Positions 12,720 to 12,810 are shown, counted from the first letter of the whole stretch. The stretch is 63,771 nt of DNA, filler included, from Octopus bimaculoides (GCF_001194135.2; 8 parts of 8 records of this genome joined end to end with filler, not necessarily neighbours in it); one strand, 5' to 3'. The notes: generated by a model from the sequence alone, not told the origin. Numbers and translations are program-made.

Positions 12720-12810
12720 AATTCCTACACATGTTTCGAAATAAATAAGAGCCCTTTCACAAAGAAGAAAGAGCTGTTGGGGTTCCTCATTTATTTCTCT
12801 TCAGGGAGTT
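12720..12810 (-). ncRNA. Type I hammerhead ribozyme (Penelope-like/retrozyme type), intact core
   Basis: Minus strand: AACUCC-CUGAAGA-[GAAAUAAAU...GCUCUUUC/GAAAGGGC...AUUUAUUUC]-GAAA-C(AUGU)GUA^GGAAUU. All core nucleotides present; stem II 9 bp + 8 bp; stem I 5 of 6 pairs. Confidence 0.75.

What the first reader, a model, noticed from the sequence alone, without database searches (positions are those of the whole stretch)
12720..12810. Intact hammerhead ribozyme on the RASEF sense strand within an intron
Seen (minus strand): complete core CUGAAGA...GAAA and a GUA triplet, with predicted cut between 12726 and 12725. Stem I pairs 5 of 6; the long two-part stem II has 9 bp, an internal loop, 8 bp with one G-U, and an 8-nt loop. 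Stem III is only 2 bp around AUGU, within the palindrome ACAUGU. Established: minimal type I hammerheads with short palindromic stem III occur in Penelope-like elements and animal retrozymes and cleave best as dimers. Inference: it would be transcribed in the RASEF pre-mRNA if the gene continues left of exon 21847, and could cut the intron co-transcriptionally.
Basis: partly seen in the sequence, partly recalled or inferred. Interest (0 to 1): 0.75.

Follow-up and report, generated by a model that had tools for sequence, protein, structure and literature searches.

The report
Transposon-borne hammerhead motif, probably inert
A complete hammerhead-ribozyme motif really is at this spot, but it is the tail end of a mobile-element repeat present in roughly a hundred or more copies (the kind already known from Penelope-like retroelements), and this lone copy shows no sign of being transcribed or of cutting RNA.

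Summary
The motif is real and sits at the stated coordinates on the minus strand: CUGAAGA 12804-12798, GAAA 12737-12734, GUA 12728-12726, cut 12726|12725. A hammerhead descriptor finds it once in the piece, against 7e-4 expected by chance. No Rfam hammerhead model matches it.

It is not a single-copy intronic element. It forms the 3' terminus of an interspersed repeat (about 12720-13132) that lies in (TA)n and is present in roughly 100-450 copies. Two related species carry the family too.

Across copies, the two core boxes are nearly invariant (0.4% minor-allele frequency against 6.2% elsewhere, p=0.01). The core-proximal part of helix II changes in ways that keep pairing only in the minus-strand RNA. 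This fits a family-level, transposon-borne minimal type I hammerhead of the Penelope-like-element or retrozyme kind.

As a cutter of a host intron it is unsupported:
- It is a solo monomer with no partner in the piece.
- Helix III forms with P~0.02, and a competing hairpin sequesters the GAAAC box.
- Position 11.1 is U in about 65% of copies.
- No RNA reads fall on the unique flank.
- Family transcripts read through the cut site without any ends there.

The RASEF context cannot be checked from this piece. This is a new member of a known kind, of low interest.

The parts
12720..12810 (-). Whole type I hammerhead-like motif (helix I open, helices II and III closed)
   Evidence: Read directly. 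It is the only descriptor hit in the piece.
12805..12810 (-). Helix I 5' strand AACUCC. In other copies 12809 and 12810 are often U.
   Evidence: 12809 T>A ~51%, 12810 T>A ~33%.
12798..12804 (-). Core box C3-A9, CUGAAGA
   Evidence: Nearly invariant among copies that share the motif; the only listed variant is U4 at 4.5%.
12738..12797 (-). Helix II: 12 bp (12797-12786 with 12738-12749), a 10-nt bulge at 12785-12776, 9 bp (12775-12767 with 12750-12758), and an 8-nt loop at 12766-12759
   Evidence: Fold gives P~1.0.
12734..12737 (-). Core box G12 A13 A14 A15.1 (GAAA)
   Evidence: No listed variant in ~450 reads.
12726..12734 (-). Helix III (A15.1-U16.1, C15.2-G16.2) with loop AUGU, then A17. The predicted cut is after 12726.
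   Evidence: P(helix III)~0.02 and the isolated stem is +1.4 kcal/mol.
12720..12725 (-). Helix I 3' strand GGAAUU, which is also the last 6 nt of the repeat family
   Evidence: DNA read depth steps from ~0-14 to ~50-160 at 12719/12720.
12817..12825 (-). Upstream ACAUGUUUU, which pairs with GAAACAUGU (12737-12729) in the lowest-energy fold and so competes with the active fold
   Evidence: -30.5 kcal/mol, z -3.8.
12720..13132 (-). This copy of the interspersed repeat family, sense on the minus strand, with the hammerhead at its 3' end. It is 5'-truncated relative to longer copies.
   Evidence: RNA and DNA reads from many diverged copies. Other copies continue past 13132 with ...CGTTCCTCGAAC. The family is present in organisms B and C.
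12705..12719 (.). (TA)-rich target sequence abutting the 3' end of the element
13133..13186 (.). (TA)-rich sequence abutting the 5' end of the element

Best explanation
The motif is the hammerhead module of a retroelement family, not a host gene feature. The ~413-nt stretch 12720-13132 (minus-strand sense) is one 5'-truncated, solo copy of an interspersed repeat that integrated into a (TA)n microsatellite. The hammerhead occupies the last ~90 nt, and the element ends 6 nt past the predicted cut.

By analogy with Penelope-like elements and their non-autonomous derivatives, source elements would use the ribozyme to process multimeric or tandem element transcripts. It would act as a dimer through the self-complementary ACAUGUGU helix III, or with help from the element's protein.

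Shown: the motif, its multi-copy nature, its terminal position, the TA-rich target, and conservation of the core across copies.

Inferred: the Penelope-type parentage and the processing role.

This particular copy keeps every core nucleotide. It has no partner, has a marginal helix I and helix III, can fold into a competing hairpin, and is not detectably transcribed. It is most likely a catalytically silent relic with no effect on the surrounding gene.
For: Motif complete and unlikely by chance.

Multi-copy family: RNA reads at 90-99% identity with many variant letters cover ~12703-13136. DNA depth is ~1 on the unique flank, ~70-300 over the motif and ~450 in mid-element, with a sharp step at 12719/12720. 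The same family, with the same end, is in organisms B and C.

Retroelement or PLE-like traits:
- TA-rich sequence on both sides and no terminal inverted repeats.
- Longer copies extend beyond 13132, and ~10% of copies start at 12807, both of which fit 5' truncation.
- A few copies abut an inverted partial copy, shown by joints 12719<->12967-12982.
- These match the published PLE insertion traits: (TA)n or AT-rich targets, an inverted 5'-truncated neighbour, and the hammerhead shortly upstream of the insertion's 3' end (PMC8557442; PMC11167929).

Hammerhead traits of PLE min-HHRs are present: long helix II, short helix I, palindromic 15.2-16.2 and loop 3, and mostly solo copies (PMC4209133).

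Constraint on the RNA:
- Core minor-allele frequency is 0.4% against 6.2% at non-core positions (Mann-Whitney p=0.010; hypergeometric 0.019).
- In core-proximal helix II, five transitions stay paired only in the minus-strand RNA, against one in the plus strand.
- 12791/12744 change A-U to U-A at frequencies that track each other run by run.
- The minus-strand fold has z -3.8, against -1.7 for the plus strand.

Inertness here:
- No second core in the piece.
- P(helix III) 0.02, P(helix I) 0.18, and the hammerhead fold is 3.4 kcal/mol above the MFE.
- No reads on the unique flank.
- Flat RNA depth and no ends at the cut site.
Against: - No Rfam hammerhead model matches.
- Position 11.1 is U in ~65% of copies, giving G.U where PLE and canonical hammerheads conserve G10.1-C11.1.
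- The unpaired nucleotide between A9 and 10.1 that is typical of PLE min-HHRs is absent.
- Helix II (21 bp with a 10-nt bulge) is far longer than any described.
- The distal helix and helix I vary without visible compensation.
- Linkage of the putative compensatory changes could not be tested.
- Low variability in the GAAAC...GUA box may be partly an alignment edge effect, because it lies 6-17 nt from the family boundary.
- The depth profile is not the simple 3'-weighted ramp expected from 5' truncation. The motif end is shallower than mid-element, and subfamilies replace 12788-12827 with a palindrome.
- No reverse transcriptase or GIY-YIG ORF was seen, so PLE parentage is inferred.
- The element ends 6 nt after the cut, against ~90 nt in the anole PLE.
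Confidence: 0.65

Rival explanations
1. The motif is a look-alike. The real conserved feature would be a long RNA hairpin at the 3' end of a retroelement, for example a recognition structure for its reverse transcriptase. The CUGAAGA and GAAA boxes would then lie beside it by accident and be copied along with the family. No ribozyme activity ever existed.
For: - The lowest-energy fold of the last 115 nt is one extended hairpin that buries GAAAC-AUGU.
- No Rfam match.
- G.U at 10.1-11.1 in most copies.
- Helix I is weak and variable.
- A lenient descriptor is expected to hit ~160 times by chance in a 2.5-Gb genome, and one such hit inside a repeat would be multiplied across its copies.
Against: - All 12 invariant core positions are present, and they are the least variable part of the motif across copies.
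- Loop 3 and 15.2-16.2 form the palindrome typical of dimer-acting animal hammerheads.
- The outer stem of the competing hairpin is not conserved: 12824 and 12827 vary in 40-50% of copies, with no matching change at 12730.
- Some divergent copies keep CUGAAGAG next to a different helix II strand (loose end at 12776).
- Chance hits had a helix II of 4-6 bp only.
Confidence: 0.2
2. The family is a non-LTR retrozyme. On this view, tandem arrays elsewhere in the genome are transcribed, self-cleave at the hammerhead and circularise, and this locus is a solo monomer left by that cycle.
For: - It is a type I hammerhead with a 2-bp helix III and a palindromic tetraloop, with a unit of a few hundred nt and low GC, as described for metazoan retrozymes (PMC7229834).
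- Solo monomers are reported (10.64898/2026.07.22.740005).
- Two RNA reads suggest a partial head-to-tail arrangement in some copy (joint 12860->12719).
Against: - There is no tandem copy here.
- DNA reads show no recurrent head-to-tail joint between the 12720 end and the other end.
- RNA depth simply tracks DNA copy number at a ratio of ~0.1-0.2, on both orientations. That is unlike the abundant monomer RNA of retrozymes.
- The element boundaries do not coincide with the cut site: it ends 6 nt past it.
- Other copies are longer than this one.
Confidence: 0.1
3. One reading: an active ribozyme exapted or tolerated in a host intron, which cleaves the pre-mRNA co-transcriptionally, as proposed for the conserved intronic hammerheads of amniotes.
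For: The core is intact in this copy, including C11.1, which only about a third of copies have. The minus-strand RNA is the structured strand.
Against: - It is a multi-copy transposon end, not a conserved single-copy element.
- There are no RNA reads on the unique flank in three runs.
- There are no ends at the cut site.
- The monomer's helix III is essentially unformed.
- Monomeric PLE-type hammerheads are inactive in vitro (PMC4209133).
- Occupancy of the orthologous site in related species could not be shown.
- The gene context cannot be verified from this piece.
Confidence: 0.05

Closest known systems
Minimal type I hammerheads of Penelope-like elements (Cervera & de la Pena 2014, PMC4209133)
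   Same: - Type I topology.
- A long helix II and a short, poorly defined helix I.
- A 2-bp helix III with a palindromic loop that allows a dimeric helix III.
- Multi-copy and mostly solo motifs.
- The host element inserts in AT-rich or (TA)n DNA, with truncated and inverted partial copies.
   Different: - No unpaired nucleotide between A9 and 10.1.
- G10.1.U11.1 in most copies, instead of the conserved G-C.
- Helix II is far longer: 21 bp with a 10-nt bulge, against 6-8 bp.
- No RT/GIY-YIG ORF or pseudo-LTR has been linked to this family yet.
- The 3' end lies only 6 nt past the cut, against about 90 nt in the anole Poseidon element (PMC11167929).
Metazoan non-LTR retrozymes (Cervera & de la Pena 2020, PMC7229834; Li et al. 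2026 preprint 10.64898/2026.07.22.740005)
   Same: A type I hammerhead in a non-coding, AT-rich repeat of a few hundred nt, with a 2-bp helix III capped by a tetraloop as in invertebrate retrozymes. Retrozymes are proposed to be non-autonomous PLE derivatives.
   Different: - No tandem arrangement here, and no recurrent head-to-tail joint in genomic reads.
- No abundant unit-length RNA.
- No recognisable loop 1-loop 2 contacts.
- The preprint finds retrozymes depleted from introns, based on Xenopus data.
SINE-like retroposons with hammerheads in schistosomes (Sm-alpha / Sj-alpha; from my own knowledge and as cited in PMC4209133)
   Same: A short interspersed non-coding retroposon of a few hundred nt that carries one type I hammerhead per unit, in many copies per genome.
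   Different: Those carry canonical hammerheads with a 4-bp helix II and loop-loop contacts, and they cleave well in vitro. I saw no tRNA-like head here, and the helix II architecture differs.
Conserved intronic hammerheads of amniotes (HH9/HH10; de la Pena & Garcia-Robles 2010, cited in PMC7229834)
   Different: Those are single-copy, conserved at orthologous sites and matched by Rfam models. This one is a repeat-family member, has no Rfam match and shows no evidence of transcription.

Membership tests
Hammerhead ribozyme, type I (Rfam RF00163 and clan) | Invariant core: C3 U4 G5 A6 N7 G8 A9, G12 A13 A14, A15.1-U16.1, H17 | tested here: met
   All are present at 12804-12798, 12737-12734 and 12727-12726.
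Hammerhead ribozyme, type I (Rfam RF00163 and clan) | Three helices around the core, with helix I open | tested here: met
   Helix II 12+9 bp, helix I 5 of 6, helix III 2 bp. Helices I and III are thermodynamically marginal, with P 0.18 and 0.02.
Hammerhead ribozyme, type I (Rfam RF00163 and clan) | Match to the curated covariance model | tested here: not met
   No hammerhead family is listed at E<=10, either in the 11-kb piece or in 181 nt around the motif. The 60-nt helix II and the minimal helix III may explain this.
Hammerhead ribozyme, type I (Rfam RF00163 and clan) | Tertiary contact between loop 1 (or a helix I bulge) and loop 2, needed for fast cleavage at physiological Mg2+ | tested here: inconclusive
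   Helix I is only 6 positions long before the element ends, and loop 2 lies 21 bp from the core. No recognisable contact motif was found by inspection.
Hammerhead ribozyme, type I (Rfam RF00163 and clan) | Site-specific self-cleavage after H17 | tested here: inconclusive
   RNA-seq of family copies shows flat depth across 12725|12726 and no ends there. Depth is low (~10-40) and the libraries are not end-specific.
PLE minimal hammerhead (PMC4209133) | Longer helix II, short helix I, and palindromic 15.2-16.2 with loop 3 (dimer-capable) | tested here: met
   The ACAUGUGU self-duplex is -6.0 kcal/mol, and the trans dimer is -53.8 against 2 x -23.6.
PLE minimal hammerhead (PMC4209133) | Conserved G10.1-C11.1 pair | tested here: inconclusive
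   G-C in this copy, but 11.1 is U in ~65% of family reads.
PLE minimal hammerhead (PMC4209133) | Unpaired nucleotide between A9 and 10.1 | tested here: not met
   A9 (12798) is followed directly by G10.1 (12797), which pairs with 12738.
PLE minimal hammerhead (PMC4209133) | Multi-copy consensus families with covariation and compensatory changes | tested here: inconclusive
   Multi-copy is met. Compensation is suggested at 12791/12744 and 12787/12748 and by strand-specific wobble changes, but linkage within copies could not be read.
PLE minimal hammerhead (PMC4209133) | Located in the pseudo-LTR of an element that encodes RT plus GIY-YIG endonuclease | not testable with these tools
   No such ORF is in the piece, and no eukaryotic genome collection was available to extend the family consensus.
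PLE minimal hammerhead (PMC4209133) | Host-element insertion traits: AT-rich or (TA)n target, 5' truncation, adjacent inverted partial copies | tested here: met
   Flanks, longer and shorter copies, opposite-strand joints at 12719. Traits are as described in PMC8557442 and PMC11167929.
Non-LTR retrozyme (PMC7229834) | Tandem repeat units, each with a hammerhead | tested here: not met
   One motif only, with no tandem unit, and no recurrent head-to-tail joint in DNA reads.
Non-LTR retrozyme (PMC7229834) | Abundant unit-length linear and circular RNA | tested here: not met
   RNA depth is low, falls on both orientations and is proportional to DNA copy depth.
Conserved intronic hammerhead (HH9/HH10 type) | Single-copy and conserved at the orthologous intronic site | tested here: not met
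   Multi-copy. The orthologous flank exists in organisms B and C, but their contigs stop at 12632 and 12652, so site occupancy is unknown.

The most novel reading that the evidence does not exclude
The family could be an undescribed cephalopod hammerhead variant with three unusual features: a 21-bp bulged helix II, a tolerated G10.1.U11.1 wobble, and a position only 6 nt from the element's 3' end. If active, its cleavage would set the 3' end of the retroelement RNA used for reverse transcription, which is a different role from the 5'-end or unit-length processing proposed for Penelope-like elements. A still rarer possibility is that this C11.1 copy retains activity and trims a host intron.
Probability: 0.1. 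Interest if true: 0.5.

Novelty: new member of a known kind. Interest (0 to 1): 0.22.

Why it matters
Hammerheads carried by Penelope-like elements and retrozymes are already known to be scattered in hundreds to thousands of copies through many invertebrate genomes. Finding one in an intron is therefore expected and does not, by itself, indicate gene regulation. The modest value here is twofold. First, I found no described cephalopod hammerhead family in the searchable literature. Second, this family has an unusually long helix II and sits at the very 3' end of its element. That could help in understanding what these ribozymes do for their elements, a question the PLE literature still treats as open (PMC8557442, PMC11167929). 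For annotating this locus, the practical message is to mask it as a repeat.

Tried and rejected
- Rfam at permissive thresholds, on the piece and on 181 nt, gave no hammerhead. The mir-297-type hits elsewhere are microsatellite artefacts.
- I first took the ~30% A/U variation at core position N7 (12800) as a sign of selection. I rejected this after laying reads on the motif alone. Those variants, along with 12790, 12793, 12801 and 12802, come from a subfamily that shares only the 5' half of the motif.
- I considered CpG decay as the cause of U at 11.1. The reciprocal product at 12737 is not among the listed variants, so a subfamily difference is more likely.
- Occupancy of the orthologous site could not be settled. 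The contigs of organisms B and C cover the flank at ~94% identity but stop 70-90 nt short of the insertion.
The narrower attempt found no unique reads at all.
- A search for real copies of the family in metagenome contigs with a two-box pattern gave 0 hits.
- I did not attempt to fetch copies through the protein collections. The repeat has no ORF over 31 aa, and the assembled contigs over it are only ~100-200 nt.
- Terminal inverted repeats: none, best local score 15.
- A second or partner core within the piece: none.
- Pfam on ten ORFs: nothing.
- Literature on cephalopod hammerheads: none found.

Full report
WHAT IS IN THE SEQUENCE.
On the minus strand, 12810-12720 reads AACUCC-CUGAAGA-[helix II]-GAAA-C-AUGU-G-UA-GGAAUU. 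Every position that defines a hammerhead core is present:
- C3 to A9 at 12804-12798
- G10.1 at 12797 paired with C11.1 at 12738
- G12 A13 A14 at 12737-12735
- A15.1 at 12734 paired with U16.1 at 12727
- A17 at 12726

Helix I pairs 5 of 6. Helix III is A-U and C-G around AUGU, inside the palindrome ACAUGU.

IS IT MORE THAN CHANCE?
A descriptor with deliberately loose stems finds this site and nothing else on either strand of the piece. In 700 Mb of composition-matched random sequence the same descriptor hit 23 times, a rate of 3.3e-8 per nt. That gives 7e-4 expected in the piece, and about 160 loose chance hits in a 2.5-Gb genome. All chance hits had a helix II of 4-6 bp, against 12-13 contiguous bp here. 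Against this, no Rfam hammerhead covariance model reports the site at E<=10, even when only 181 nt are searched. So the motif is real as a pattern, but it is not a canonical, model-matching hammerhead.

WHAT SURROUNDS IT.
The motif is not unique sequence.
- RNA reads from the source species (organism A) cover about 12703-13136 at 90-99% identity with many alternative letters, which means they come from many diverged copies.
- Genomic reads sampled at well under 1x coverage give depth ~1 on the unique left flank. Depth is 70-300 over the motif and ~450 in the middle of the repeat, with an abrupt step at 12719/12720. The family therefore has roughly 100 to a few hundred copies, and it ends exactly with GGAAUU, the 3' strand of helix I.
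- The same family, with the same end, is present in two related species.
- Both sides of the element are TA-rich microsatellite, and there are no terminal inverted repeats.
- Other copies continue beyond 13132 (...CTGAGATAAT then CGTTCCTCGAAC) where this one runs into TA repeats. About a tenth of copies begin only at 12807. A few copies abut an inverted partial copy at the 12720 end.
- The minus-strand RNA of the last 115 nt folds far better than shuffles (z -3.8). The plus strand does not (z -1.7).

Together these point to a retroelement whose sense strand is the minus strand, with the hammerhead at its 3' terminus. This copy is 5'-truncated and sits in a (TA)n target.

HOW THIS COMPARES WITH PUBLISHED ELEMENTS.
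Canonical Penelope-like elements (PLEs) carry hammerheads in their pseudo-LTRs. They favour microsatellite or AT-rich targets and often have an inverted 5'-truncated copy next to them (PMC8557442). In the anole Poseidon element the cut site lies 85-92 nt upstream of the reverse-transcription start, which becomes the 3' end of the insertion, and the endonuclease nicks AT-rich DNA (PMC11167929).

PLE minimal hammerheads have these published traits (PMC4209133):
- a long helix II and a short helix I
- a palindromic helix III region
- mostly solo copies
- no detectable cleavage as monomers in vitro, and only weak cleavage as dimers

Non-LTR retrozymes have the same type of hammerhead but occur as tandem units expressed as abundant RNA (PMC7229834). 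A 2026 preprint derives them from PLE pseudo-LTRs.

IS THE RIBOZYME CONSERVED WITHIN THE FAMILY?
I could not obtain individual copies, only per-position read counts.

When reads are laid on the motif alone, a subfamily that shares only the 5' half of the motif drops out. Among the remaining ~450-700 reads per site, the 12 invariant core positions have a mean minor-allele frequency of 0.4%. The other 67 positions average 6.2% (one-sided Mann-Whitney p=0.010). Only one core position shows a listed variant, against 29 of 67 others (hypergeometric 0.019).

In the 12 bp of helix II next to the core, five single-site transitions keep pairing as G.U only in the minus-strand RNA, against one that would do so only in the plus strand. 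12791 and 12744 change A-U towards U-A at frequencies that track each other across three runs (0.28/0.43/0.47 against 0.18/0.29/0.31). 12787 and 12748 do the same at low frequency. A few divergent copies keep CUGAAGAG beside a different helix II strand.

Against constraint:
- Position 11.1 is U in ~65% of copies, so most have G.U where hammerheads conserve G-C.
- The distal helix and the outer part of helix I vary without compensation.
- Half of the core lies 6-17 nt from the family boundary, where local alignment may hide mismatches.
- The 20 least-supported variant rows were not shown by the tool.

I read this as moderate evidence that source elements kept a hammerhead-shaped RNA. It is not proof.

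DOES THIS COPY WORK?
Several results say probably not.
- There is no second core anywhere in the 11-kb piece to form a dimer.
- In the monomer ensemble helix II is fixed (P~1). Helix III has probability ~0.02 and helix I ~0.18, and the hammerhead fold is 3.4 kcal/mol above the minimum.
- With 20 more nt of upstream sequence, the best fold pairs ACAUGUUUU (12825-12817) with GAAACAUGU (12737-12729). That buries one core box in an extended hairpin.
- At >=97% identity, three RNA-seq runs (about 1.8 Gb sampled from each) give no read anywhere in the unique flank 12016-12711. The locus is not detectably transcribed in those samples.
- At family level, RNA depth is identical on the two sides of the cut in every run and orientation (16/16, 21/21, 9/11, 6/6, 17/17, 9.4/10). 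No molecule ends accumulate at 12725/12726. The only flagged start, at 12723, is where homology between copies ends.
- RNA depth over the repeat is a roughly constant 0.1-0.2 of DNA copy depth on both orientations. This looks like background transcription of scattered copies rather than a dedicated abundant RNA.

These RNA data are shallow and not end-specific. They fail to support cleavage rather than excluding it. The anole study also saw no RNA-seq ends at a hammerhead that did cleave in vitro with protein help.

The structural description and the link to PLE or retrozyme hammerheads hold. The step from there to a ribozyme that cuts the RASEF intron is not supported. The gene assignment cannot be checked, because the piece has no recognisable exon or domain and the cited exon lies outside it.

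VERDICT.
This is a genuine hammerhead-type motif, best explained as the ribozyme module at the 3' end of a PLE-type (or PLE-derived non-autonomous) retroelement family. The copy here is truncated, solo and probably silent (confidence 0.65). The main rival is a terminal hairpin with accidental core boxes (0.2). Retrozyme status (0.1) and an active intronic ribozyme (0.05) are less likely. It is a new member of a known kind. Its unusual points are the very long bulged helix II, G.U at 10.1-11.1 in most copies, and the position 6 nt from the element's end. These would only become interesting if biochemistry showed activity.

Noticed in passing
window 13187-13330; also 10840-10984 and 11074-11159; a fragment at 11958-12015: An extremely abundant short repeat (...TTTATTTGTTTCAGTCATTTGACTGCGGCCATGCTGGAGCACCGCCTTT...). 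Contig word depth is in the millions in all three species, and it has strong RNA read support. It is probably the dominant SINE of these genomes. It lies next to the hammerhead-bearing element, separated from it by (TA)n.
   Followed up: partly
other copies of the family, replacing roughly window 12788-12827: In about a tenth of copies, a perfect 30-nt palindrome, AGGTTCGTCCATCGATCGATGGACGAACCT, stands where this copy has the CUGAAGA box and the helix I 5' strand. The junction positions vary (12780-12819). Those copies lack a hammerhead core. The origin of the palindrome is unknown.
   Followed up: no
window 12788-12812: A separate subfamily shares only this part of the motif region and carries 12790C, 12793G, 12800A and 12802A, which puts G5 to U in the core. 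The 5' half of the motif therefore occurs joined to a different 3' end.
   Followed up: partly
window 12733 (minus-strand C15.2): In RNA run X21, 25 of 37 reads carry G>A here, together with 12744T, 12753A and 12757G, and they come from only two start positions. This is either one expressed family copy with U15.2.G16.2 or PCR duplicates.
   Followed up: no
window 12901-12982: Other copies differ from this one here. Joints 'go back 64' (12964->12901), loose ends pile up at 12952, 12970 and 12982, and depth dips at 12960-12979. This suggests an internal ~64-nt duplication in the family, or a deletion in this copy.
   Followed up: no
window 12542-12579 and 12620-12700: These are small low-copy repeats inside the otherwise unique left flank. 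Contig depth is 10-20 times that of neighbouring sequence in all three species.
   Followed up: no
window 13949-14037 / 14146-14234: An 89-nt inverted repeat, 89% complementary, with arms 108 nt apart. It is flanked by long (TC)n/(GA)n tracts. It could be a foldback or MITE-like element.
   Followed up: no
window 11472-11627 and 14674-14716: Sub-threshold Rfam hits to mir-297, mir-4012 and mir-3149 fall on (CA)n/(TA)n/(CATA)n microsatellites. They are low-complexity artefacts, not microRNA genes.
   Followed up: yes
window 6719-6852 / 7015-7138 and 10004-10156 / 10270-10422: Two pairs of direct repeats, 78-86% identical and 266-296 nt apart. The first pair is followed by (AAT)n tracts. They may be short tandem duplications or adjacent copies of other repeats.
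   Followed up: no
window 11348-11420, 13433-13645, 14427-14680, 16140-16280 (approximate): Runs of N lie inside the piece, next to microsatellites. They are assembly gaps or masked stretches, and reading frames across them are meaningless.
   Followed up: no
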